This document shows positions 1,361 to 50,657 of a DNA stretch of 64,000 nt, piece by piece; positions within the stretch are counted from its first letter, which is position 1, and every line of letters starts with the position of its first letter. The notes under the pieces were generated by a model. The model was not told where the DNA came from. It saw only the letters and a list, made by a program, of their open reading frames with translations, and did not search any database. The stretch is taken from positions 181,226-245,225 of the IMG/VR virus record IMGVR_UViG_3300047095_000752; one strand, 5' to 3'. Both the position numbers and the translations under genes were made by a program.

Positions 1361-2962
1361 TTATAATGTTTGGTTTATAAGGTAGCGACCACAATCCCAT
1401 ATTTTAACGGTATATTCTTTTGAGTACTTACTATATCTATTGCTAAAATTGTCATCTATATAATAAAAGTCTGGTTCAATGCTTGTAGAAATTTCGCATT
1501 GAGAATCTAATTTAAAATATCGCTTATTTATTAAAACTGGCATTCCAATACCCCAAATATAATCTATAACAGAATGGTCTAGTTTAGTTCCACACCTCAT
1601 GACAATATTATCCTTTATCAGTACCACAAATACAAGTTCATCATTATAATAATATCCAACATTAGTATCAGACTTAGTATATCCTTCTATGTGATTTTTA
1701 TTTAAGAATTTTCGGGATATTCTTTTATTAATATATCTCATGTCACACTCATTGAAATCTATAATTTTGTTTAGATTTAATTTTTCTTTTATTATTGACT
1801 GGATGATGTCGGATTTATATATCCATTCATCCTCAAATATATGTAATAAGTCAATACCTTTATTAAGACATAGATTCGTTTTGTTTAAGTGGTATTGAGA
1901 GTCTTTACCTTGGAGTTCAGAATGCCAATACAATCCGTTAAATTCTATAGCTAAGTTATAGTCGGGTAAATAGATATCAAGTTCGAGAGGTGATATTATA
2001 GATCGATTTGAAGTTGATATGTTATAATCTATAGGTAAAATGGATTTAATAAAATCAACAATTTCGTTTTCATATTTTGATGTATATGGTAGTGGATCGC
2101 ATACATAGCATCTTGGTATTCGACCATTATCTAAATGATCTTCGAAGGTTGTGTTACAATCGTTACATTGAAATCTATATTTCTCATTTTTGACTCCATT
2201 GTAATTATATAAATTAAATAATGGAGTCAAAGATTTAAACTTATGTGAATTTAATATTTTATTGAATTTACGAGCTAATGATTTTTTTCTAAGTTTAGTC
2301 TTTCCTAAATCCGTTTTTAAATAATGTATTTCACCATAACGTTTTATGTTTGTTTCCTTTATTTTTTGTTTTACCGTATCACTTTGAAAAGTATATTTTA
2401 CACCATACTTCTCTAAATTTGTTTTTTTGATATTATTTTGTATGGTTGGATTATTAAATGGGTTTTCAAATCCATGTTGCTTTAAATTGGTTTGTTTAAT
2501 TTGTTCTAAAATAATATCGGATTTGAGTGGGTTATCCACGCCATATTTTTTAAAGCACGTAGTTTTAATTTTCTCTCTACACTCATTATTTTCTTTCGAA
2601 AGAAATTCTTCAACCCCATATCTTTCTAAATTAGTTTTCTTTATTTTATCTCGTATTTGTTTAATTTGTGTTATATACTCAACTCCGTATTTTTCTAAAT
2701 TAGTTTTCTTTGTTTTTTCAGTTCTTTTTTGTATAAATTCTGGATCTTTAAACTTACACTTCGTCGAACAATAAATATAAAACCCCTTAGCTAGATTTTT
2801 AAATTTTAATTTGTTATTACAAACCCTACAGTTAAGTTTTACATTAGGATTTATATATTTTATATAGAATTCTTCTTTAGAAGCTTCAGGATGAATTTTT
2901 GATAAGTGTGTCGATAATTGATTTATATTTGAATACTTTTTATCACATAGGCTGCAATCCAT
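1361..2962 (-). CDS. homing-endonuclease-like protein: Zn fingers, tandem KxTNLxKYG repeats, C-terminal PD-(D/E)XK (Vsr/DUF559-like) domain
   Basis: about six K(K/Q/E)T(N/C)xx(K/R)YG repeats; ELDIYLPDYNLAIEFNGLYWH nuclease motif; adjacent to thyX. Confidence 0.75.
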   Translation of the reverse strand: MDCSLCDKKYSNINQLSTHLSKIHPEASKEEFYIKYINPNVKLNCRVCNNKLKFKNLAKGFYIYCSTKCKFKDPEFIQKRTEKTKKTNLEKYGVEYITQIKQIRDKIKKTNLERYGVEEFLSKENNECREKIKTTCFKKYGVDNPLKSDIILEQIKQTNLKQHGFENPFNNPTIQNNIKKTNLEKYGVKYTFQSDTVKQKIKETNIKRYGEIHYLKTDLGKTKLRKKSLARKFNKILNSHKFKSLTPLFNLYNYNGVKNEKYRFQCNDCNTTFEDHLDNGRIPRCYVCDPLPYTSKYENEIVDFIKSILPIDYNISTSNRSIISPLELDIYLPDYNLAIEFNGLYWHSELQGKDSQYHLNKTNLCLNKGIDLLHIFEDEWIYKSDIIQSIIKEKLNLNKIIDFNECDMRYINKRISRKFLNKNHIEGYTKSDTNVGYYYNDELVFVVLIKDNIVMRCGTKLDHSVIDYIWGIGMPVLINKRYFKLDSQCEISTSIEPDFYYIDDNFSNRYSKYSKEYTVKIWDCGRYLINQTL

Positions 2963-9110: not shown

Positions 9111-9917
9111 ATGTCAATTTTCAAAAAAATTATACTTAGTTTAGGTGTTACATTATGTAGTTTAAATTCATATGCAATTACAGTTGATGGAAACTGGGAC
9201 GATTGGTTTTCATATTCAGGTAACATTGGTTTTAACACATGGCGTGAAAATCTAGTAACAGTTAACAACCCCAACATTCGTTTTCAAAACGATGAAGAAG
9301 GACCCACACCCGGTGGTGGTGGTCAGTTATATGATATAGAGCAAATCTTCTATGCATTTTCAGATAATGATCCCAACGCTATAAGTGGTGGTAAACTTTA
9401 TATTGGACTTGTAACGGGATTTCCACCACAAGGTGTTCCCGCAGATGCTCTATATGCTGGTGATCTTTTCATTGACATCGGTGCTACTGGTAGTTATACA
9501 TTTGCTATTAACTTAAGTGAACGACAAGCCGACGCTTCTCGCTTCAATCAAGGTTGGATCAATGTTAACTGGGATACAATAGACACAACATTTTATCCAG
9601 CAGCAAACCCATATCGAGTTGATGAAAATGGACCCGGTGTATTCAATTATACAACTTCATTAAACCCCGTTGTAGAAACCAATCTACACGGAAAGCATTA
9701 TTTTTATGAAATTTCAATCGACCTAGACAGCATCATGGAAGAACAGTTAACAAATCCAAATGGTGGTATCGGTCTACATTGGACTATGGAGTGTGGTAAC
9801 GACGTTATCGATGTCGTGGATAACACCCCTTTAAATCCAGTGCCCGAACCTAGTACAATCGCTCTGCTAACAATGGGTTGTATTGGGGCTGCATTTCGTC
9901 GTAAATTCAGCGCATAA
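9111..9917 (+). CDS. PEP-CTERM (exosortase-sorted) surface protein
   Basis: signal peptide MSIFKKIILSLGVTLCSLNSYA; C-terminal VPEPST + hydrophobic helix + RRK. Confidence 0.92.
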   Translation: MSIFKKIILSLGVTLCSLNSYAITVDGNWDDWFSYSGNIGFNTWRENLVTVNNPNIRFQNDEEGPTPGGGGQLYDIEQIFYAFSDNDPNAISGGKLYIGLVTGFPPQGVPADALYAGDLFIDIGATGSYTFAINLSERQADASRFNQGWINVNWDTIDTTFYPAANPYRVDENGPGVFNYTTSLNPVVETNLHGKHYFYEISIDLDSIMEEQLTNPNGGIGLHWTMECGNDVIDVVDNTPLNPVPEPSTIALLTMGCIGAAFRRKFSA

Positions 9918-24172: not shown

Positions 24173-24218
24173 AAAAAACACGCTACCGGGATATCTGCCG
24201 GTAGCGTGTTCTTTTTTA
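24173..24218. terminator. bidirectional intrinsic terminator
   Basis: AACACGCTACCGG/CCGGTAGCGTGTT flanked by A- and T-runs. Confidence 0.8.
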
Positions 24219-24222
24219 GTTC

Positions 24223-24633
24223 TTATGCTTTCTTTCCTTTCTGGATTGCTTCGAGGACAATCCCGGTTGAAAGGACCGCGAACAATATCACGGTCTGCAC
24301 CATAGCCGCCCCAGCCACTGCAGTTAGGCAGTAGGGGGATTCGTTCAACTTGTAGGACATGGCGATGATCGCCAGTCCCGCTACGACGAGGGAAATAACC
24401 GCCCGGAGGCGGATGTGATTTTCCCACATGTAGCGCGTCCGCTCATGTGGCTCCGACCACCTCTGATTGATAATCAGTACCCAAAGCGCCGCTGTTGTTC
24501 CGGCGACACATGATACCACCGGGATGCTGATGTTGTTGAGTGGTGCGAAATACGCCGCCCCGTAGATTGCAGCCTCTCCAATGATAGCAGCGATTAGCAT
24601 AAAAGGCATTAAAGCCTTCCGATCTTCAAACAC
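24223..24633 (-). CDS. GC-rich multi-pass membrane protein
   Basis: about four hydrophobic helices; GAAGGAG RBS. Confidence 0.7.
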   Translation of the reverse strand: MFEDRKALMPFMLIAAIIGEAAIYGAAYFAPLNNISIPVVSCVAGTTAALWVLIINQRWSEPHERTRYMWENHIRLRAVISLVVAGLAIIAMSYKLNESPYCLTAVAGAAMVQTVILFAVLSTGIVLEAIQKGKKA

Positions 24634-24663
24634 GATTTTACTCTCCTTCCAAGAGGTATTATA

Positions 24664-24981
24664 CTATTTCCCGAACATCGCCCCCATCATCCGACCCGCC
24701 GTCGCCAATCCCATCACCGTATTTTTAATCTCCTCTATTTTGGGTCTAAGACCCGATGCCTTGAAGCGGAGCGCGTCAACAATGACGCCCACCACAATCA
24801 AGGTAACAACGCCACATATCAGATAGGTCGGGGCGGCGAGCGCCTTCATAGCACCCACCGCGAGGAAGCCCACCATGTAGGCTTCCTTGTTCCCCCCGGT
24901 CTGGATTCCTTTCCAGACCGGGGTAACGAATGCTCGGGTGAGGGACCCAATCCTTTTGAGTCCCTTTACGATGGGGTTCAT
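24664..24981 (-). CDS. GC-rich membrane protein
   Basis: ATG 24981 in ATGA overlap with the upstream gene; hydrophobic core. Confidence 0.65.
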   Translation of the reverse strand: MNPIVKGLKRIGSLTRAFVTPVWKGIQTGGNKEAYMVGFLAVGAMKALAAPTYLICGVVTLIVVGVIVDALRFKASGLRPKIEEIKNTVMGLATAGRMMGAMFGK

Positions 24982-25316
24982 GTGCAAGCCCCAACCCGTG
25001 CACCCACGGACTGGGCGAGGTACCATGCCGCGTAGACGGCGATGGCGGGGATGAACCACAAGAGGCTACACCCCGTCACCACGAGGTCTAGAATCTGACC
25101 GGCCTTGTGGTCTACGGTCCCCTTCCTCTCAATCGCGAGCATGATACCCATGCTCACGAAACTTCCCGTGATCGCCACAGCGGCAATCGTGGGGAAGATG
25201 GTGCCGACAGCACACCAACCAATAAGGCTGATGGCGTCGGCGGTGACTGGCGACCTCTCAAGGAAGTCAAGACACTTCCCGATGGTCACCTGAAGGTGAA
25301 GTTTGAGTTTACCCAT
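24978..25316 (-). CDS. GC-rich membrane protein
   Basis: AAAGGA RBS; hydrophobic helices. Confidence 0.65.
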   Translation of the reverse strand: MGKLKLHLQVTIGKCLDFLERSPVTADAISLIGWCAVGTIFPTIAAVAITGSFVSMGIMLAIERKGTVDHKAGQILDLVVTGCSLLWFIPAIAVYAAWYLAQSVGARVGACT

Positions 25317-25349
25317 AATATATCCTTTCTTGGAGATGTTTTTGTTCAG

Positions 25350-25796
25350 TTATACCGCCACACAACCGACGCGGGCGGGACGCTCACCCATAAAGCTATT
25401 ATTACGGATGGTGGATAAAATCTTCTCACCGATAATGTAAGTGGCGAGGGCGGTGATGACACGGAGTGTAAAACCGAGTAGCACACCCACCACCATAAGC
25501 TGCAACCCAACCAACCAGATGGTCAGTTTGCCTAGCACCGCATAACCGGCGAAGCGGGCAATACCCCCTTCGATGACGACCGTCAGTATCGTCTTCAACG
25601 AGGGCTTAGAGACGAGCTCAATCGCGGAGCATACAAGCACCACACCACCAATGGCGGTGAGAGCGACTGGGGCGGCGACGAGACCCATCGCCATCCCACC
25701 TACACCCACAACAACGGACGCCACAGGGGCGAACTTCACGCCGAAGTTGAGGGCGCGGACGATGATATTCTTGACATTGGATACGATGCTTTTCAT
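25350..25796 (-). CDS. GC-rich membrane protein
   Basis: first gene after class A promoter; very hydrophobic. Confidence 0.7.
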   Translation of the reverse strand: MKSIVSNVKNIIVRALNFGVKFAPVASVVVGVGGMAMGLVAAPVALTAIGGVVLVCSAIELVSKPSLKTILTVVIEGGIARFAGYAVLGKLTIWLVGLQLMVVGVLLGFTLRVITALATYIIGEKILSTIRNNSFMGERPARVGCVAV

Positions 25797-25869
25797 GGTA
25801 TTACCCTTTGATGTTTAGACTATATGAAACCACCATTCAATCCGCATAGATCGATGATAGTATTCTTTA

Positions 25870-42756: not shown

Positions 42757-43833
42757 ATGAGTAAAGAAAAGACTGAGAATAGCTATATGATCGCCGGATG
42801 CGATGTAGGTACCGGGAATCTTGTTTTTGCAAAAATAAATAAAGATAATAAAGTTGAAGTTAATTCAATTCGTGATATGTTTATTTACGTCGAAGATGAT
42901 CACATTTCTTCCTCGGAAATGGCTAGCTCAAAGCTGGACTATATCACCCAAAATGATGATAATGGCGATCCAGAATGGCACGCTGTAGTTGGGGACGATG
43001 CATTAAAACTTGCAAATATTTTTAATTCTAAGATTAATCGCCCAATGTCCAAGGGTATGCTTAGTCCACATGAAGTAAATGCGTCTCCTATTATTACAGC
43101 CATGCTTAAAAATATTATTGGAGAAGATGTTAATGGTGGACACGTTGTATTTAGTGTTCCTTCCCAGCCATGCGATACCGGTGAAGTTGCCCCATTGCAT
43201 TTCCACACGGAGGTATTTAAACAGATCTTTAAGAATATTGGATTTACCGAAGTTGTTCCGCTTAATGAAGCTCAGAGTGTGGTATTTTCAGAATGTGGAT
43301 CTGAGAATTTCACTGCATTGAGTGCCTCATGGGGCGCAGGGCAGGTTAATATAGCACTCACATTCAAAGGATCACTATTGTTTTCATTTAGTATTGGTCG
43401 TAGCGGTGATTGGATCGATGAGTATGCTGGATCTGCAACTGGATTGATCCCAAATAAAATTACATCGATTAAAGAAAAACCTGATATGAATATTAAAAAT
43501 CCAGTTACAGCGGCTACTCCCAAAAAGGAAAGAGTAGCGCGGCAAGCAATTGGATTCGCTTATCAACAACTGATTGCTTATGTTGTAGAACATATTGACG
43601 AGCAATTTAAAGCTCACGCTGATAATATTGATCTTGACGAACCAATTCCATTTGTACATGCAGGTGGTACTAGCCTTATTCCCGGATTTATTGATGCATT
43701 TACTGAGAAGTTTAATGAACTAAAAGAATTTCCAGTTGAGATCAGTGAAATTCGACAAGCTAAGGATCCCCTTAGCGCGATCAGTGTCGGATGTTTGACC
43801 TATTCACAATGGCTTCAAAATAAGAAGAGTTAA
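42757..43833 (+). CDS. actin-fold ATPase (MreB/FtsA/ParM superfamily)
   Basis: GCDVGTGN (phosphate 1), NEA (connect 1), SWGAGQVN (phosphate 2), AGGTSLIPGF (adenosine), DPLSAISVG (connect 2). Confidence 0.85.
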   Translation: MSKEKTENSYMIAGCDVGTGNLVFAKINKDNKVEVNSIRDMFIYVEDDHISSSEMASSKLDYITQNDDNGDPEWHAVVGDDALKLANIFNSKINRPMSKGMLSPHEVNASPIITAMLKNIIGEDVNGGHVVFSVPSQPCDTGEVAPLHFHTEVFKQIFKNIGFTEVVPLNEAQSVVFSECGSENFTALSASWGAGQVNIALTFKGSLLFSFSIGRSGDWIDEYAGSATGLIPNKITSIKEKPDMNIKNPVTAATPKKERVARQAIGFAYQQLIAYVVEHIDEQFKAHADNIDLDEPIPFVHAGGTSLIPGFIDAFTEKFNELKEFPVEISEIRQAKDPLSAISVGCLTYSQWLQNKKS

Positions 43834-43837
43834 TATT

Positions 43838-44782
43838 ATGCCCGCAAAATTAACTCATGACTTTGTGAACTCTTATTATAGAGATCATGGATATACATTA
43901 GATTCCACATATAATGGAAATAAGAATAAAGATGACCTGATATGCCAAGAGGGACATAAAACTAAAATATGTTTTGATAAATTTAAAAACCGTGGTGATC
44001 GATGTTCCGAATGTTCTGGTAACGAAAAATGGACATATGAAGAAGTATACAAAGCCTTCAAAGATAAAGGTTGTGAATTATTAGAAACAGAATATATTAA
44101 TAATCAAACAAAAATGAAATACAAATGTAAATGCGGGAATGGAAGTTCAATAACATTAGGTAATTTTAATTCAGGGCATAAATGCTCAAAATGTGGCGGC
44201 AACGAAAAATTAAAATATGAAACTGTCTACAAAGCCTTCAAAGATCAAGGTTGTGAATTGTTAGAAACAGAATATATTAATACACTTACTAAAATGAGAT
44301 ACAGGTGTGAATGTGGTAATGAATCCATCAGTTCGTATAATAATTTTCGGAGTGGTAATAGGTGTAAGGAATGTGGGTTATTAAAAAGGACTGGCGCGAA
44401 TCACCCAAGATTTAAAAAAGATAGAACTAGAATGGATCGAACTAAAATACTATCGTTTGATTATAGAAAACTCCACATCTTAAATGACGATCCCAATTAT
44501 GCAAATCACGTCCAATCCAAAAATGTCGCCAAGACATCGGGTAATAGATGGGATATATCTGATTATACCGTCGATCATATACAACCAAGAATTGCCTTTA
44601 TTGATAATGATCTTGACATTAAATACGATTTAAAAATAATTAAAGAAATCTGTAACCTACGAGAAAACTTAAGAATAATACCTCAAAAAGAAAATGGATC
44701 TAAAGCCGGTAAATACAACCAAGAAGAGTTCATGGCTTGGTTCAATGAAAAGATAAATGTATATAACTTAAAGGAAATATAA
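43838..44782 (+). CDS. Zn-ribbon-repeat HNH endonuclease
   Basis: three C.LLETEYIN...KM.Y.C.CG...G.(R/K)C..C repeats; VDHIQP...NL...N..K. Confidence 0.75.
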   Translation: MPAKLTHDFVNSYYRDHGYTLDSTYNGNKNKDDLICQEGHKTKICFDKFKNRGDRCSECSGNEKWTYEEVYKAFKDKGCELLETEYINNQTKMKYKCKCGNGSSITLGNFNSGHKCSKCGGNEKLKYETVYKAFKDQGCELLETEYINTLTKMRYRCECGNESISSYNNFRSGNRCKECGLLKRTGANHPRFKKDRTRMDRTKILSFDYRKLHILNDDPNYANHVQSKNVAKTSGNRWDISDYTVDHIQPRIAFIDNDLDIKYDLKIIKEICNLRENLRIIPQKENGSKAGKYNQEEFMAWFNEKINVYNLKEI

Positions 44783-47101
44783 ATGCAAATTGTAAAGACT
44801 ATGCAATTGACAAATCAGTGGGTTGTTGTGATAATCAACTCCATGCAGGATGTGGTTAATGAAATTGGTAGATTATCGGGTAGTTCAACATACCTGAATA
44901 ATGTTAATCTATGGGCAAGTACTAGATATACAGCGACACCAAACTACAATGCCCGTAACGCCTTCCGTACCGTCAGAGACCAATACATTGCCCAAGCCCG
45001 TATCAATGTAGGTGAACAAGCATTAGACGACGCCACATCATTCACACCAAATCCCCTAGAACAAGGCCGGGTACTCGTTGGAATCAATGAGGATATTACA
45101 ACTGGCGGCCCTCTTGTCGAATACGTACATTACTGTTACTTGAAGGTACCACTTGATACAACTTCAATCTCCGTATTCGGACAAACAACCTCCGTAATCC
45201 TGAATGATGACCAAATCTCCAGAGCAATCAAGATAAATCAGGTAGGCTATCTGCCCTCATCACCAAAGAAGTATGCCTATATAGGAGCGCACATTTATGA
45301 TCACGGTCCGCTTACCATCGATGCGACAAGTTTTACTATTCATGATAGTAGCTCAAACGCAACTGTGTATACCGGATCGGTCACACTAAGAGATTCAAAT
45401 ACAATTCTTGCAAGTGGAAAACCATTGACGGGTGAAAACGTCTATCAGATGGACCTCTCGGATTTTTCAGGTATTGGTGAATTTTACATTAAAGTTCCCG
45501 GCGTGGGAAGATCTTGGAATTTCAAACACACACTCGATGTTTATGGGGAAGTATTCTACACTACAACCCGTGGTCTTTATCATCAACGTTGTGGATTACC
45601 TCTAAAAGCTCCTTATACTAATTGGCTACGCCCAACCTGCCATACGAAACCAGTCAAGGAATCTAAATTCGTTTCGTTCCCAAGTCAATTTACAGATCGT
45701 CCCGCTAACTATGAACGGTTTGATGTTTACGGTGCGACCACAGATCATAGCTCATTCAACGTGACCGCAGCGGGCGGCTGGCATGACGCGGCAGACTGGG
45801 ATCGTAATACTCAGCACTACACTTGTGTTTTTGATCTTCTTTACGCTTATGAAATGGATCCTGATAAATTCACTTCAAATCAATTAAATATCCCGGAATC
45901 ACCAACCGCTTACCCAGATATATTGAAAGAGGCGGAATACGGTTTACAGTGTTGGAAGAGATCTATGGACTCGCGGGGCGGAGTTTCCGGGATGATCGAG
46001 ACGAATACGCATCCGACACGCGGAGTTGACGGCAATTACGCATACTCGGTTAGAACTCGCTGGGATTCACTACTATTAGCCGCCGCAGCAGCCATGATGG
46101 CGGAATTAATCGCGCCATTTGACATGGCTAAATCGAATACTTGGAAATGGTATGCTATTAAAAGTTATAACTTCGGAAACAATCCCGCTAATAGCTTAGG
46201 AACTGTGACAATCCCCGCGAAGACGAACCGAGGACTTGGTACATCTTACACCTATACCTTCACGGAAAAAGACACGCATATTGAACCGCTCCTTGCTCAC
46301 GCTAAATCCAGATTGTATAAGTTAACAAGCGATTCCACCTATCTAACTGGACTTGATACTTTAATTGGAAAATTAAGAGCACCATTTAAATGGCCATATA
46401 CAAATCGTGATTACAGCGGATGGATTAACTATAGTTGTCTCGATCACGTGTCAAATCCAACTACCAAAGCTAATTATATTAAACTTTGGTTTACAAATTA
46501 TGCTGATGCGTTACTACCCCACGTTGCAGCCCAGCCTTATAGATGTACTTGGCCAGTTACAAAAGACTTCTGGTTGGATTGGGGAGCGAGTTGCATGACC
46601 AATGAGAACAGATCCCTGCTACTTTCATACAAACTCACGACTCAATCCAAGTATTTAGAAGCTGCAATTTTAAACATGGACTATATGCTCGGCGCAAATC
46701 CACAGGGTATGGTATACACAACTGGTTTAGGGCAGTCGTATCCTGCAATTTTACAGCACGAAACGAGTCAGTTTGATGGCATCGATGATCCAGTACCCGG
46801 AATTGCCTTGTACGGTCAAACCGGCGGCTCACACAACACACTACGCACAACAGTCTGGCAATCCCCTTCTCCGACGGGACAGGTGGAATTCAAGACGCCC
46901 GTTGTTCCTTTATGGAGATCTTGGTCCGCTCACCCAACCTTAAATACAAGACAGTGTGAATTTACGATCCAAGAAACAATGTCCTGCAATATCTTCTCGG
47001 CTGCAGCCTTAATGTCGGAGGGGTGGAGTCCTTCAAATACACTTAAAACCAAGACTCCAAAGACACTGGCGAATTTACCCGGATATTATTACTTACCGTA
47101 A
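44783..47101 (+). CDS. glycoside hydrolase family 9 with Ig-like CelD_N domain
   Basis: INQVGYLP, LYHQRCG, GGWHDAAD, DYMLGANPQGMVYTTGLG, CEFTI catalytic Glu. Confidence 0.88.
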   Translation: MQIVKTMQLTNQWVVVIINSMQDVVNEIGRLSGSSTYLNNVNLWASTRYTATPNYNARNAFRTVRDQYIAQARINVGEQALDDATSFTPNPLEQGRVLVGINEDITTGGPLVEYVHYCYLKVPLDTTSISVFGQTTSVILNDDQISRAIKINQVGYLPSSPKKYAYIGAHIYDHGPLTIDATSFTIHDSSSNATVYTGSVTLRDSNTILASGKPLTGENVYQMDLSDFSGIGEFYIKVPGVGRSWNFKHTLDVYGEVFYTTTRGLYHQRCGLPLKAPYTNWLRPTCHTKPVKESKFVSFPSQFTDRPANYERFDVYGATTDHSSFNVTAAGGWHDAADWDRNTQHYTCVFDLLYAYEMDPDKFTSNQLNIPESPTAYPDILKEAEYGLQCWKRSMDSRGGVSGMIETNTHPTRGVDGNYAYSVRTRWDSLLLAAAAAMMAELIAPFDMAKSNTWKWYAIKSYNFGNNPANSLGTVTIPAKTNRGLGTSYTYTFTEKDTHIEPLLAHAKSRLYKLTSDSTYLTGLDTLIGKLRAPFKWPYTNRDYSGWINYSCLDHVSNPTTKANYIKLWFTNYADALLPHVAAQPYRCTWPVTKDFWLDWGASCMTNENRSLLLSYKLTTQSKYLEAAILNMDYMLGANPQGMVYTTGLGQSYPAILQHETSQFDGIDDPVPGIALYGQTGGSHNTLRTTVWQSPSPTGQVEFKTPVVPLWRSWSAHPTLNTRQCEFTIQETMSCNIFSAAALMSEGWSPSNTLKTKTPKTLANLPGYYYLP

Positions 47102-47191: not shown

Positions 47192-47932
47192 ATGTTCAAG
47201 TTAATTCGCAAATATATTGACTTCATATTCAAGACCGACCTAAAAAATTATGACAAGGATTATCGAGATTATTGTGGCGATATCGATCTGTATGAAAGTT
47301 GTTCTCGTGATCCATTTGTATTTATGAAGAAATATTTTCAAGATAACTTATTAATTAATATCTCTCTTTTGGATATGGATCACCTGCAATTATTGATTTT
47401 AGACGCATTTGTGAATAAACAAAAAATCATTGTAAAAGCTAAAAATTATAACCACACGACGCAGGTTCAAATCATCCTCACAGCTTGGTTGATGATTTTC
47501 TATCCAAATACTAAAATTGGTGTAATTGTACCTAATCAAATATTAGCTAAAAAATACATTGCGGATTTACAAAATGCTTTTAATTATATTAAAAAGGAAT
47601 ATTATGGGGACGCTTTTTTTGAAGTGACCGCCCAATCAATAACACTCACTAACAATTCACATTGTACAGTAAAGTCTTCTCGCGATGTCGATCTCAATGG
47701 TTTATTTCGTGGTATTACCTTGGATTGTATTTTTTACAATGATGTAAACCGACTTCAGTGCGTTGAAGAAATATACGACCTCTTCAAGAAGCAATATAAC
47801 CCAGAATACGTATTTATGTTCAACACAGACTCTAAGGAAATGCCCTATCATATTAATCCTAAGTCTAATGTATGGTTTGATGCTAAATTTAATTCAAATT
47901 CAGAATTATATCCTACAACCATACAAAAATAA
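47192..47932 (+). CDS. degenerate large-terminase (gp17-like) ATPase domain, catalytic motifs lost
   Basis: C.RDP..F.K.Y, IIVK, AWLMIFYPN.KI, I.L.N.S, RG.TLDCIF; Walker A reads AKNYNHTT and Walker B reads YND. Confidence 0.65.
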   Translation: MFKLIRKYIDFIFKTDLKNYDKDYRDYCGDIDLYESCSRDPFVFMKKYFQDNLLINISLLDMDHLQLLILDAFVNKQKIIVKAKNYNHTTQVQIILTAWLMIFYPNTKIGVIVPNQILAKKYIADLQNAFNYIKKEYYGDAFFEVTAQSITLTNNSHCTVKSSRDVDLNGLFRGITLDCIFYNDVNRLQCVEEIYDLFKKQYNPEYVFMFNTDSKEMPYHINPKSNVWFDAKFNSNSELYPTTIQK

Positions 47933-48871: not shown

Positions 48872-50095
48872 ATGGCTTCAAAGCTTAAAAAACAAAAAGT
48901 TGTAGACCTCACTGAAGATAACTCGGATTCGTTTCAAAATGCGTTTTCGAGTTTTCTATCCTCTACCCAAGGAATTGAAAATAAACTAACTGATGATATT
49001 AAGAAAATTCCAACTGGTATTGATTTTCTAGATGCCATTACGGGCGGTGGTATTCCTTGTAAGTTCTCAGTATTCGTGGGTAAGCCCGGCGGCGGTAAAA
49101 GCTCACTCCTTGCCAGTATTATTAAAGCCGGTCAGAAGAAATGGGGTAAGAAGTTTATTGCGGTATATGCAGACTCAGAAGAGTCCATGTCTCAGCAACG
49201 CCTAAAGGATTTGGGTTGTATATACCCAGTAAGTATTATTAATGGACTCACCGTAGAAAAGCTATTCAAATGTGTAGAGTCGGTATGTGCTTTTAAAGAA
49301 TCCAATCCCGAAAGTCTAGAGATCCCATCCATCATTGTTTGGGATTCAATTGCAAATACTCAAACTGAAGATTTAATGAATTCCGAAGAGTTATCGAATA
49401 CAGATGGCATGCGCCGCGCAAATATTCTATCCAAATATATACCAAAGTATGTCGACCGCCTAGCCAAGTACAACATCGCACTTGCCGCCGTAAATCAGTA
49501 CAGAGACAAGCCAAACGTCGGCGGTGGACCACAGGCTGCTGATATGCGAAACATGGGACAAGACGTTACAACCCCCGGCGGACACGCAGTCCAATATAAT
49601 GCATACTTAATGTTAGATATCGCTCAGGGTCCTATGCATAAAAATGATCCTTATGGGTACCCAATGGCACCAGTTACAATAAAAGCGATAAAAAACAAAT
49701 CATTCACATCAAACGTACCTATAGTATTAAATTTTAATCACACCAAAGGATTTTCTAACTTCTGGACGAATTATGAATTTCTAAAGACCCGCAAGTATAT
49801 TAAAGCTGGTGCCCGATGCTCATTAAATTCATATCCAACAGTAACATTTTTTCAAAAGAATGTCGCAAATCTCTATAATACAAATCCAGAATTTAAGGAA
49901 GCATTTAACGCTGACCTTAAATCTGCATTTGAAGAATTTATTAAAGAACACTCCGCCGAAAATATGGATAAAGATTCTTGGGATCCTAGTTCAGACATTA
50001 GCAATTCAACCGAACCTGTGATACAATATGATAGTCCTGATATGCACCCCGAAACCTTAGAAGAAGAGTCTGTGGAGTTATTCGATGTTGACTAA
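48872..50095 (+). CDS. RecA/UvsX-like recombinase
   Basis: IPTGIDFLDAITGGGIP, GKPGGGKS, DSE, IVWDSIA, VNQYRD, TPGG.A, IKNK. Confidence 0.9.
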   Translation: MASKLKKQKVVDLTEDNSDSFQNAFSSFLSSTQGIENKLTDDIKKIPTGIDFLDAITGGGIPCKFSVFVGKPGGGKSSLLASIIKAGQKKWGKKFIAVYADSEESMSQQRLKDLGCIYPVSIINGLTVEKLFKCVESVCAFKESNPESLEIPSIIVWDSIANTQTEDLMNSEELSNTDGMRRANILSKYIPKYVDRLAKYNIALAAVNQYRDKPNVGGGPQAADMRNMGQDVTTPGGHAVQYNAYLMLDIAQGPMHKNDPYGYPMAPVTIKAIKNKSFTSNVPIVLNFNHTKGFSNFWTNYEFLKTRKYIKAGARCSLNSYPTVTFFQKNVANLYNTNPEFKEAFNADLKSAFEEFIKEHSAENMDKDSWDPSSDISNSTEPVIQYDSPDMHPETLEEESVELFDVD

Positions 50096-50657
50096 TACTT
50101 CCGATGTAGATTTTATTATACCACTATTAAAACAAGAAAATAATTCAATTAAAAAGATAGCTTATAGTGGAACCCATGGTACTGGTAAAACTACATCGTG
50201 CTTCAATTTAGCTACACAGTGTAAATTAAATTGTCATAGTAAATCCATCCATCTATTAACTGAAGTTGCTAGTGAATCTCCATTTAAAATTAATAAAGAG
50301 ACTACAGTTGAAAGTCAGATGTGGATATTCGTAAATCAAATTTCAAGAGAATTAGAAAATTCACTTCGGTATAAAATATTAATATCAGATCGAACTATTG
50401 TTGATAATATTGCTTATACTATGGTAGCTGGATTCAAAGATTTGGCTAAAAATCAGTATGAATTCGCGAAGTCATTTATTTCAACATATGATTATATTTT
50501 TGTTAAAAAGAACGCTAACAACGATTTTCACTATGAAGATGGTATTCGGGACTCAAAGGATTCCCAGTACCGACAAGATGTAGAAGATGCGCTACTTAAT
50601 ATTTACATAAAACTGGAATCTTACATGGTAGCTCGAAATCGTATAATTTTTATTTAA
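50085..50657 (+). CDS. P-loop kinase (AAA_28 / NadR-like, possible dNMP kinase)
   Basis: YSGTHGTGKTT, EVA, SDRTIVDNIAY, DGIR. Confidence 0.8.
   Translation: MLTNTSDVDFIIPLLKQENNSIKKIAYSGTHGTGKTTSCFNLATQCKLNCHSKSIHLLTEVASESPFKINKETTVESQMWIFVNQISRELENSLRYKILISDRTIVDNIAYTMVAGFKDLAKNQYEFAKSFISTYDYIFVKKNANNDFHYEDGIRDSKDSQYRQDVEDALLNIYIKLESYMVARNRIIFI

What the first reader, a model, noticed from the sequence alone, without database searches (positions are those of the whole stretch)
44783..47101. GH9 cellulase-family enzyme in a phage
Seen: a complete Ig-like plus GH9 catalytic domain with DAAD and Glu motifs, no signal peptide, and somewhat higher GC than its flanks. GH9 is not a typical phage depolymerase family. 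Inference: it digests a beta-glucan EPS/floc matrix, on the virion or at lysis, consistent with a PEP-CTERM/EPS-producing host.
Basis: partly seen in the sequence, partly recalled or inferred. Interest (0 to 1): 0.6.

Follow-up and report, generated by a model that had tools for sequence, protein, structure and literature searches.

The report
Phage-borne GH9 glycan-cutting enzyme
A 245-kb lake-water phage carries an intact cellulase-family (GH9) enzyme without an export signal, probably taken from the surface-sugar synthesis genes of uncultured Hydrogenedentota bacteria, and it most likely cuts the host's own sugar coat rather than plant cellulose.

Summary
ORF 44783-47101 (+) encodes 772 aa with a CelD_N Ig-like domain and a GH9 catalytic domain. 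GGWHDAADWD and Glu726 are invariant, there is no signal peptide, and GC is 43.8% against about 31% in the flanking genes.

The gene is truly phage-borne. The genome is one 245-kb viral contig with a T4-type portal, head protease, UvsX and DnaB. The gene order is kept in two related phages, and contigs from independent lake runs bridge both junctions.

All signal-less copies form one clade spanning three different phage types. That clade nests among Hydrogenedentota genes. In bacteria the family carries a signal peptide and sits with glycosyltransferases, a Wzy-like protein and a phosphodiesterase, which looks like a glycan-synthesis cluster and not a cellulolytic one. The phage's PEP-CTERM protein also matches the same Hydrogenedentota sub-lineage.

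In other phages the gene ends the tail module, and a distant GH9 is fused into a tail fibre. My best reading is a depolymerase of the host's surface or extracellular glycan. Whether it rides on the virion or is released at lysis is unresolved, and the substrate is unknown. Viral GH9s have been reported before, so I rate this a new member of a known kind.

The parts
44783..47101 (+). Whole ORF, 772 aa (P0001): a three-domain GH9 enzyme without a signal peptide
44772..44775 (+). AGGA ribosome-binding-like site. The upstream ORF's TAA (44780-44782) abuts the ATG, which fits co-transcription with the upstream genes.
   Evidence: read directly from the sequence
44783..45217 (+). N-terminal domain, residues 1-145: a beta-sandwich with an inserted helical hairpin. 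It is shared with the secreted bacterial homologues and has no clear solved relative.
   Evidence: Domain model pLDDT 93.6. Best PDB match has Z 5.2, to Ig-like S-layer domains. Conserved in 28 homologues.
45221..45508 (+). CelD_N Ig-like domain, residues 147-242
   Evidence: Pfam PF02927, E 4e-14
45542..47023 (+). GH9 (alpha/alpha)6-barrel catalytic domain, residues about 254-747
   Evidence: Pfam PF00759; CelD Z 35.5, BoGH9A Z 34.2, xanthanase Z 28.5-28.9 (6fhj/6fhn)
45773..45802 (+). GGWHDAADWD, residues 331-340. Asp335 and Asp338 correspond to the catalytic-base pair of the GH9 'DAGD' motif.
   Evidence: Aligned to the GWHDAGD motif of 3x17 and 1clc; invariant
46958..46960 (+). Glu726 (Q-C-E-F-T), the inferred catalytic acid
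   Evidence: Invariant in 40 homologues and in all 24 phage-type copies. Its position agrees with CelD Glu555 by the offset of the structural alignment. Not verified residue by residue.
46754..46762 (+). Gln658-His659-Glu660, standing where canonical GH9s have His-His-Arg. This is a subfamily-specific change next to the active site.
   Evidence: Alignment to 3x17. Q658 is invariant; H659 is Ser or Asn in some phage copies.
47075..47098 (+). Conserved extreme C-terminal tail L-x-G-Y-[YW]-Y-L-P, of unknown role
   Evidence: L765, G767 and Y770 are invariant; L771 and P772 are nearly so. pLDDT is low there.
42757..43833 (+). Upstream neighbour: an actin-like protein of the Volactin family. Its position upstream of the GH9 is kept in related jumbo phages, directly adjacent in L004.
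   Evidence: Pfam PF25216, E 3.7e-52; 78% and 75% identical in L001 and L004
43838..44782 (+). HNH/CapR homing-endonuclease-like ORF between the actin-like gene and the GH9. It is variable and probably mobile.
   Evidence: phrog_559 E 1.8e-27; CapR domain; only 37% identical in L001 and absent in L004; assembly breaks inside it
9111..9917 (+). Phage-encoded PEP-CTERM protein with an N-terminal signal-like segment. It is the second gene that links the phage to one Hydrogenedentota sub-lineage.
   Evidence: PF07589 at 29.5 bits, TIGR02595; 54-61% identical paralogues in G001-G003; co-distribution with the GH9

Best explanation
The gene encodes an active inverting GH9 endo-beta-glycanase. A phage lineage captured it from Hydrogenedentota-like bacteria and stripped it of its secretion signal.

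In the bacteria, the secreted enzyme belongs to a surface-glycan or EPS synthesis cluster with two GT4 transferases, a phosphodiesterase-like protein, an unknown protein of about 400 aa, and in some loci a Wzy-like protein (+/- Wzy-like). It probably trims or releases that polymer, as BcsZ and PslG do in their systems.

In the phage, the enzyme is made in the cytoplasm without a signal. It reaches its substrate, the host's own coat or matrix glycan, from the outside. I see two routes. It could be carried on the virion to clear a path to the cell surface (about 0.45 of this reading). Or it could be released at lysis to free progeny from the matrix (about 0.55 for this jumbo phage, since its gene is not in a recognisable tail module).

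Shown: fold, domains, catalytic motifs, phage residence, a single signal-less phage clade, the bacterial gene context, and the tail-module context in other phages.

Inferred: activity, substrate, timing and location of action, and host.
For: - GH9 fold and motifs.
- Phage-borne: T4-type portal, head protease, UvsX, DnaB and RNR in the window. The genome is one 245-kb IMG/VR viral record. Gene order is kept in L001 and L004. Independent runs bridge both junctions.
- All signal-less copies form one clade (SH-aLRT 100) under two models. The clade nests beside Hydrogenedentales copies (support 98). It spans jumbo phages at 30-35% GC, a temperate lambda-like phage at 57% GC, and a third type at 47.5% GC.
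- Bacterial copies carry N-terminal signals. They lie in a cassette that recurs in Hydrogenedentales, Waddlia, a gammaproteobacterium and an unclassified MAG: GH9 with 2x GT4, a PF01663 protein and an unknown protein, +/- Wzy_C, GT2 and DUF6492.
- In L075 the gene ends the tail operon after gpJ and a tail-fibre-assembly-like gene. In L077 it follows a Laminin_G_3 protein.
- In L006 a distant GH9 (31% identical) is fused behind a phage-tail repeat and a Laminin_G_3 domain inside a tail-fibre module.
- GH9 already includes enzymes that cut substituted beta-1,4-glucan polymers: xanthanase 6fhj and xyloglucanase 6dht.
- Host link: the phage's PEP-CTERM protein and its GH9 are found in the same 6 of 61 genomes of the G001 phylum. 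One further genome has only the PEP-CTERM family and 54 have neither. My Fisher calculation gives p of about 1e-7, uncorrected for shared ancestry.
Against: - In this phage the gene sits between an actin-like gene, a homing endonuclease, a TerL-ATPase-like ORF and UvsX. That is not a recognisable tail or lysis module.
- There is no phage-specific virion-anchoring domain. The N-terminal domain is shared with the secreted bacterial enzymes.
- The substrate is unknown. The subfamily is only 20-25% identical to characterised GH9s, has Gln-His-Glu instead of His-His-Arg, and carries an insertion of about 40 residues before the catalytic Glu.
- Phage GC (35%) is far from that of the proposed host lineage (62%).
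- I obtained no CRISPR or direct physical host evidence.
- No expression data: none of the runs that hold the sequence is an RNA run.
Confidence: 0.55

Rival explanations
1. Intracellular role. Lacking a signal, the enzyme acts in the cytoplasm during infection on nascent lipid-linked oligosaccharide or another internal glucan. This would shut down host coat synthesis and recycle sugars and lipid carrier, or keep new coat from trapping progeny.
For: - No signal peptide in any of the phage-clade copies listed.
- In the jumbo phages the gene is embedded among replication, recombination and cytoskeletal genes. It is probably co-transcribed with the actin-like gene.
Against: - GH9 enzymes and all bacterial members of this subfamily are exported enzymes that act on assembled polymers.
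- In other phages the gene lies in the tail operon.
- I know of no precedent for a cytoplasmic GH9 acting on lipid-linked intermediates (own knowledge).
Confidence: 0.15
2. Auxiliary metabolic cellulase. The phage supplies a cellulase that boosts the host's breakdown of algal or plant cellulose in the lake, as is usually proposed for viral GH9, GH5 and GH6 genes.
For: - The Pfam GH9/CelD_N architecture is that of CelD-type endoglucanases.
- Viral GH9 genes have been read this way, and one hydrolysed CMC (PMC10465536, PMC8725595).
Against: - A nutrient-acquiring enzyme needs export from a living cell, and the phage clade has lost the signal.
- Bacterial homologues sit with glycosyltransferases and Wzy-like genes, not with cellulolytic or sugar-uptake loci.
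- The gene sits in tail modules in other phages.
Confidence: 0.12
3. Binding protein only. The GH9 scaffold has been retained as a glycan-recognising receptor-binding module with little or no catalysis.
For: - The changed His-His-Arg signature and the Ala in place of Gly in the DAGD motif.
- The association with tail-fibre genes in other phages.
Against: - Both Asp residues and the Glu are invariant across phage and bacterial copies down to 40% identity.
- The same 'changed' residues are present in the bacterial enzymes, so they are a trait of the subfamily and not decay in phages.
Confidence: 0.06
4. Not phage-borne: a bacterial gene joined to phage DNA by mis-assembly.
For: - Higher GC than its flanks.
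- Assembly breaks about 50-550 bp upstream, inside the endonuclease ORF.
Against: - The same gene order occurs in L001 (a different sample, 75% identical protein) and in L004.
- Contigs from independent runs X5, X6 and X7 cross the 5' junction, and those of X6 and X7 cross the 3' junction into the next ORF; X5 record 15 reaches 47108. The X5 and X6 records and X7's 3' record match without differences.
- The breaks lie in a repeated homing-endonuclease gene, not at the GH9.
Confidence: 0.02

Closest known systems
CelD-type Ig-like + GH9 endoglucanases (C. thermocellum CelD 1clc, compost LC-CelG 3x17, A. acidocaldarius Cel9A 3ez8)
   Same: - CelD_N Ig-like domain followed by an (alpha/alpha)6 GH9 barrel.
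- Z 32-35.5 over about 500 residues.
- Both Asp residues of the DAGD motif and the C-terminal Glu are present.
   Different: - Only 20-25% identical.
- Extra N-terminal domain.
- DAAD in place of DAGD, and Gln-His-Glu in place of His-His-Arg.
- An insertion of about 40 residues before the Glu.
- A conserved C-terminal tail.
- No signal peptide, no dockerin and no CBM.
- The bacterial relatives are not in cellulolytic loci.
GH9 enzymes acting on decorated beta-1,4-glucans: Paenibacillus xanthanase (6fhj) and Bacteroides ovatus xyloglucanase BoGH9A (6dht)
   Same: Same fold (Z 28.5-34). They show that GH9 can cut the backbone of substituted or exopolysaccharide glucans, which is the type of activity proposed here.
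   Different: About 19-22% identical. Different accessory domains. Their substrates are known, and this one's is not.
Hydrolases encoded inside polysaccharide-synthesis clusters (BcsZ in cellulose operons, PslG in Psl), named from my own knowledge
   Same: The bacterial homologues are signal-bearing hydrolases that sit next to glycosyltransferases and a Wzy-like protein.
   Different: Different GH families (GH8, GH39). The phage copy stands alone, without the cluster and without the signal.
Phage tail-fibre or tailspike depolymerases
   Same: - An enzyme aimed at host surface glycan.
- The gene sits at the end of the tail module in L075 and L077.
- A GH9 is fused into a tail fibre in L006.
   Different: - An alpha/alpha barrel, not a beta-helix.
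- No phage-specific anchoring domain.
- In this jumbo phage the gene is not in a tail module.
Viral 'AMG' cellulases from metagenomes (rumen viral GH9 with CMCase activity, PMC10465536; Mariana Trench viral GH9, PMC8725595)
   Same: A GH9 gene flanked by viral genes, with a bacterial origin inferred.
   Different: - The rumen GH9 is 79.5% identical to a gene from a rumen MAG classified as uncultured Ruminococcus.
- This one belongs to a separate three-domain subfamily.
- It forms an old, signal-less, phage-only clade that is 44-52% identical to its nearest bacterial genes.

Membership tests
Glycoside hydrolase family 9 (CAZy GH9 / Pfam PF00759) | Catalytic domain matches the family profile above the curated cut-off and has the (alpha/alpha)6-barrel fold | tested here: met
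   95.6 bits against a 27.7 cut-off. Z 35.5, rmsd 2.8 A over 498 residues to CelD.
Glycoside hydrolase family 9 (CAZy GH9 / Pfam PF00759) | Two Asp residues of the D-A-G-D motif (catalytic base pair) | tested here: met
   D335 and D338 in GGWHDAADWD align with GWHDAGD of 3x17 and 1clc and are invariant. Gly is replaced by Ala in nearly all members of the subfamily.
Glycoside hydrolase family 9 (CAZy GH9 / Pfam PF00759) | C-terminal catalytic acid Glu (CelD Glu555) | tested here: inconclusive
   E726 is invariant. It lies at the expected place by the offset of the structural alignment, model 141-747 against CelD 46-575. Sequence alignments stop at residues 679-737, and I had no model coordinates to superpose.
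Glycoside hydrolase family 9 (CAZy GH9 / Pfam PF00759) | His-His-Arg of the first GH9 signature | tested here: not met
   It aligns to Gln658-His659-Glu660. Only the second His is kept, and not in all phage copies. This is a conserved family signature and not the catalytic pair, so it argues for altered substrate handling rather than against membership.
Glycoside hydrolase family 9 (CAZy GH9 / Pfam PF00759) | Hydrolysis of beta-1,4-glycosidic bonds with inversion | not testable with these tools
   Needs an enzyme assay.
CelD-type (Ig-like + GH9) architecture | N-terminal CelD_N Ig-like domain packed before the barrel | tested here: met
   PF02927 at residues 147-242, E 4e-14. The structural alignments start at residues 140-147.
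Virion-associated phage depolymerase (tailspike or tail fibre) | Gene lies in the tail or baseplate module | tested here: not met
   The flanks here are actin-like, HNH endonuclease, TerL-ATPase-like and UvsX genes. The feature is met in relatives L075, L077 and L006.
Virion-associated phage depolymerase (tailspike or tail fibre) | Phage-specific N-terminal domain that anchors the enzyme to the tail | tested here: not met
   Residues 1-145 are shared with the secreted bacterial enzymes. No tail-fibre family was found on P0001.
Virion-associated phage depolymerase (tailspike or tail fibre) | Protein present in purified virions | not testable with these tools
   Needs virion proteomics.
Hydrolase of a polysaccharide-synthesis cluster (BcsZ/PslG-like role) | Encoded beside the glycosyltransferases and polymerase of the polymer, and exported | tested here: not met
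   Met for the bacterial homologues. The phage copy has neither the cluster nor a signal, so I claim only descent from such an enzyme, not membership.
Viral auxiliary metabolic cellulase | Host-derived cellulase whose product can reach environmental cellulose from a living infected cell | tested here: not met
   The signal peptide is lost in the whole phage clade. The bacterial relatives are not in cellulolytic loci.

The most novel reading that the evidence does not exclude
The signal-less GH9 clade is a structural virion enzyme, which would make it a new fold class of phage depolymerase (an alpha/alpha barrel instead of a beta-helix). It would be shared by at least three unrelated phage types that infect one large-genome lineage of the uncultured phylum Hydrogenedentota. 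Its substrate would be the polymer made by the GH9/GT4/Wzy-like cassette. That would name the phage receptor glycan and give the first gene-level host marker for phages of this phylum.
Probability: 0.25. Interest if true: 0.6.

Novelty: new member of a known kind. Interest (0 to 1): 0.4.

Why it matters
It changes how a viral 'cellulase' should be read. Gene context in the bacterial relatives and in other phages points to the host's own coat polymer as the target, not to carbon cycling of plant or algal cellulose. Surveys that count viral GH9 genes as cellulose-degrading AMGs may therefore be mislabelling them.

It also gives two independent gene links between a 245-kb low-GC lake phage and a high-GC, large-genome lineage of Hydrogenedentota. 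I found no report of phages infecting that phylum in my paper search.

Finally, it offers a compact, well-folding enzyme that could be tested on uncharacterised environmental exopolysaccharides.

Tried and rejected
- tblastn of P0001 against 50,697 deposited phage genomes gave no match, and PHROGs has no family for it.
- Sequence alignments to solved GH9s, single or by profile, never reached the catalytic Glu.
- The N-terminal domain alone gave only weak Ig-like matches in the PDB (Z at most 5.2). The 'atlas' fold library was not available.
- Host search by CRISPR: no Cas1 in the three Hydrogenedentales genomes, so there were no arrays to mine.
- The 50-60% GC island at 24.2-25.8 kb has no DNA match in those genomes.
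- A control search for the PEP-CTERM family in another phylum failed on a handle error and was not repeated. Its restriction to Hydrogenedentota is therefore shown only within that phylum.
- No other member of the bacterial cassette is present in the phage genome. The only hit was a weak AAA_28 match.
- Laminin_G_3, tail-collar and Terminase_6C profiles found nothing in the phage genome, so I could not place its tail-fibre module.
- Rfam found nothing in the window.
- The promoter and terminator scan was no better than shuffled sequence.
- The 'careful' tree did not finish in time. Both trees I report are quick searches (SH-aLRT only), one with LG+G4 and one with the C20 mixture.
- I sent no complex prediction, because two copies exceed the size limit. 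I did not use the large protein-representative search, because the word search gave ample relatives.
- No alternative genetic code was used.
Full report
**What is there**

The window holds an ORF at 44783-47101 on the + strand, 772 aa. Its ATG abuts the TAA of the upstream ORF, and AGGA lies 8-11 nt before it.

Pfam finds a CelD_N Ig-like domain at residues 147-242 and a GH9 catalytic domain at residues 254-671, both far above their cut-offs. An AlphaFold model built on 40 homologues has mean pLDDT 90.3. It matches C. thermocellum CelD with Z 35.5 (rmsd 2.8 A, 498 residues). Other Ig+GH9 enzymes follow at Z 32-34, and the GH9 xanthanase at Z 28.5-28.9 (6fhj/6fhn).

**Catalytic residues**

- The motif GGWHDAADWD (residues 331-340) aligns with the GWHDAGD motif of solved GH9s. 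Asp335 and Asp338 are invariant.
- Glu726 (Q-C-E-F-T) is invariant too. Sequence alignments stop before it. The structural alignment (model 141-747 against CelD 46-575) puts it where CelD Glu555 lies, by offset only.
- The family's His-His-Arg is Gln-His-Glu here.

**Signal peptide, GC and the missed domain**

- There is no signal peptide. The protein starts exactly at the conserved core, while bacterial homologues carry a hydrophobic N-terminus plus a linker. The one hydrophobic window is an internal helix of the catalytic domain.
- GC is 43.8%, against 31% for both neighbouring genes and 34.8% for the genome.
It is a beta-sandwich with a helical insert (domain model pLDDT 93.6) and has no clear solved relative (Z at most 5.2).

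**Is it in a phage?**

Yes. The evidence is as follows.

- The genome is a single 245,225-bp IMG/VR viral record that CheckV rates 78% complete.
- The window holds a T4-type portal, a head maturation protease, a UvsX-like recombinase, a DnaB helicase, ribonucleotide reductase, PhoH and homing endonucleases.
- The order actin-like gene, (endonuclease), GH9, 246-aa ORF, 164-aa ORF, UvsX, AAA_28, DnaB is kept in two related phage contigs from other samples. L001 has a 75% identical GH9. L004 has a 56% identical GH9 and lacks the endonuclease.
- Contigs of independent lake-water runs cross the 5' junction (X5, X6, X7) and the 3' junction into the next ORF (X6, X7); X5 record 15 reaches 47108. The X5 and X6 records and X7's 3' record show no differences. 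The only assembly breaks lie inside the endonuclease ORF.

**Relatives**

The word search found 444 homologues.

- Bacterial copies are about 840-930 aa and all carry an N-terminal signal. They occur in Hydrogenedentota, Planctomycetota, Chlamydiota (Waddliaceae, Parachlamydiales), Lentisphaerota and a few Gammaproteobacteria.
- Copies of about 770 aa without a signal come from phage contigs.
- In two trees (LG+G4 on 105 rows; C20 mixture on 50 rows) all signal-less copies form one clade with SH-aLRT 100. That clade sits beside Hydrogenedentales copies with support 98, inside a wider group that includes the other named Hydrogenedentota copies.

The phage clade holds three kinds of phage:

- the low-GC jumbo group (30-35% GC);
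- a temperate lambda-like phage at 57% GC (L075), where the GH9 follows gpJ and a tail-fibre-assembly-like gene and precedes DUF5675 and an integrase;
- a third type at 47.5% GC (L077), where it follows a Laminin_G_3 protein.

A fourth phage contig (L005, with terminase, portal and primase) carries an 855-aa copy. That copy keeps a lipoprotein-type signal and groups with Sedimenticola genes, so it is a separate capture.

A fifth viral contig (L006) encodes a 1,404-aa protein. It combines a phage-tail repeat, Laminin_G_3, CelD_N and GH9, and sits among baseplate and tail-fibre genes. A distant GH9 (31% identical) is thus built into a tail fibre.

**Bacterial gene context**

The two long contigs I looked at first were uninformative. 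Clustering the flanks of 38 loci showed a recurring cassette: GH9 with two GT4 glycosyltransferases, a PF01663 phosphodiesterase-like protein and an unknown protein of about 400 aa. Wzy_C, GT2 and DUF6492 are present in some loci.

The cassette occurs in Hydrogenedentales (where the GH9 is duplicated in tandem), Waddlia, a gammaproteobacterium and an unclassified MAG. This is the layout of a glycan-synthesis cluster with its own hydrolase. It is not a cellulose-degrading locus. None of the other cassette genes is in the phage.

**Host**

The phage encodes a PEP-CTERM protein at 9111-9917. Its homologues occur as 6-8 paralogues, the closest of them 54-61% identical, in each of the three Hydrogenedentales genomes that also hold the nearest bacterial GH9.

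Among 61 genomes sampled from that phylum, 7 have this PEP-CTERM family and 6 have the GH9. The 6 GH9 genomes are all among the 7, and all 7 are 6.1-7.9 Mb genomes. My Fisher calculation gives p of about 1e-7, not corrected for shared ancestry. One of these genomes, the MAG behind L012 (isolate ME2006-08-22D15), is a lake MAG — by my reading of that isolate name, from Lake Mendota — and every run that holds the phage is lake water or freshwater.

Two unrelated phage genes therefore point to one large-genome Hydrogenedentota lineage as host or donor.

The GC gap (35% against 62%) argues against this. Such gaps are known for jumbo phages such as phiKZ (own knowledge). The raised GC of the GH9 fits a gene from a high-GC source that has been only partly ameliorated. 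I obtained no CRISPR evidence.

**How it most likely works**

The enzyme keeps the catalytic pair and Glu in every copy down to 40% identity, so I take it to be active. Its ancestors are exported enzymes of a coat or EPS synthesis cluster. The phage clade has lost the signal, which fits a protein that leaves the cell either on the virion or at lysis.

The tail-module position in L075 and L077 and the tail-fibre fusion in L006 show that GH9 enzymes can be virion equipment. In this jumbo phage, however, there is no anchoring domain and no tail-gene context. Release at lysis is therefore at least as likely here.

I put 0.55 on 'depolymerase of the host's own surface or extracellular glycan'. The rivals are an intracellular role (0.15), an AMG cellulase (0.12), a binding-only protein (0.06), an artefact (0.02), and other readings for the rest.

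**Comparison with what is known, and novelty**

Viral GH9 genes have been listed as AMGs in trench sediments, and a rumen viral GH9 was shown to hydrolyse CMC (PMC8725595, PMC10465536). No deposited phage genome has a detectable relative of this protein.

The gene is thus a new member of a known kind: a phage-encoded glycan hydrolase. Its new points are a distinct three-domain subfamily, an old signal-less phage-only clade shared across phage types, a synthesis-cluster origin, and a likely Hydrogenedentota host. I rate its interest as moderate.

Noticed in passing
window 42757-43833 (+): An actin-like protein of the Volactin family (PF25216, E 3.7e-52), a family first named in haloarchaea. It lies upstream of the GH9 and is 75-78% identical in the two related jumbo phages. 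It may be a phage cytoskeletal protein, the actin counterpart of PhuZ tubulin. No tool result bears on what it does.
   Followed up: partly
window 9111-9917 (+): The phage encodes a PEP-CTERM sorting-signal protein with an N-terminal signal-like segment. It is about 60% identical to a multi-copy family in large-genome Hydrogenedentales. The host's exosortase would sort it to the cell surface, where it could remodel the surface or exclude other phages.
   Followed up: partly
window 24200-25800 (-): A sharp 1.6-kb island of 50-60% GC in a 30% GC background. It encodes four tandem small proteins (112-148 aa) that are very hydrophobic and rich in Ala, Gly and Val. No Pfam family matched the three I scanned, no tandem repeat was found, and there is no DNA match in the Hydrogenedentales genomes.
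   Followed up: partly
window 43838-44782 (+); also 1361-2962 (-): HNH/CapR homing-endonuclease-like ORFs. The one before the GH9 is only 37% identical in L001 and absent in L004. Public assemblies break inside it (loose ends at 44237-44751, and one contig skips 44276-44571). This suggests a repeated, mobile element.
   Followed up: partly
window 47192-47932 (+): A 246-aa ORF just after the GH9 looks like the ATPase domain of a T4-type large terminase (atlas score 0.96; phrog_5989 E 5.7e-9). The genome's own terminase-like gene is elsewhere, at G000:38727-39389 (-). It may be a stand-alone P-loop paralogue, and it is conserved in L001 and L004.
   Followed up: partly
window 47075-47098 (+), residues 765-772: The extreme C-terminus L-x-G-Y-[YW]-Y-L-P is conserved from phage to Chlamydiota copies but is modelled with low confidence. 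It could be a docking or sorting tail. Unexplained.
   Followed up: no
L007 4841-7399 and 7779-10415; L008 4702-7401 and 7818-10415; L012 3635-6232 and 6458-9241: Hydrogenedentales carry two tandem paralogues of this GH9. They are preceded by a BACON-domain protein and a coiled-coil protein and followed by the GT4/phosphodiesterase cassette.
   Followed up: partly
L006 7904-12118 (+): A 1,404-aa tail-fibre protein in a 60%-GC viral contig fuses a phage-tail repeat, Laminin_G_3, CelD_N and GH9. A patatin-like phospholipase gene follows it.
   Followed up: partly
L005 9839-12406 (+): A different phage contig (terminase, portal, primase) carries a copy of the family that keeps a lipoprotein-type signal and a proline-rich linker. 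It groups with Sedimenticola genes, so it is an independent capture, apparently used in exported form.
   Followed up: partly
window 50085-50657 (+) and L003 15426-16019: The phage AAA_28 protein, a few genes downstream of the GH9, is 30% identical (E 4e-14) to an AAA_28 gene three genes from the GH9 in a Waddliaceae genome. This is probably coincidence.
   Followed up: no
G000:13572-16862 (outside the window): The phage genome has a cluster of six tRNA genes on the minus strand, including two tRNA-Ile(TAT), Leu(TAA), Asn(GTT) and Arg(TCT). These read A/T-ending codons. That fits a low-GC phage in a high-GC host.
   Followed up: no
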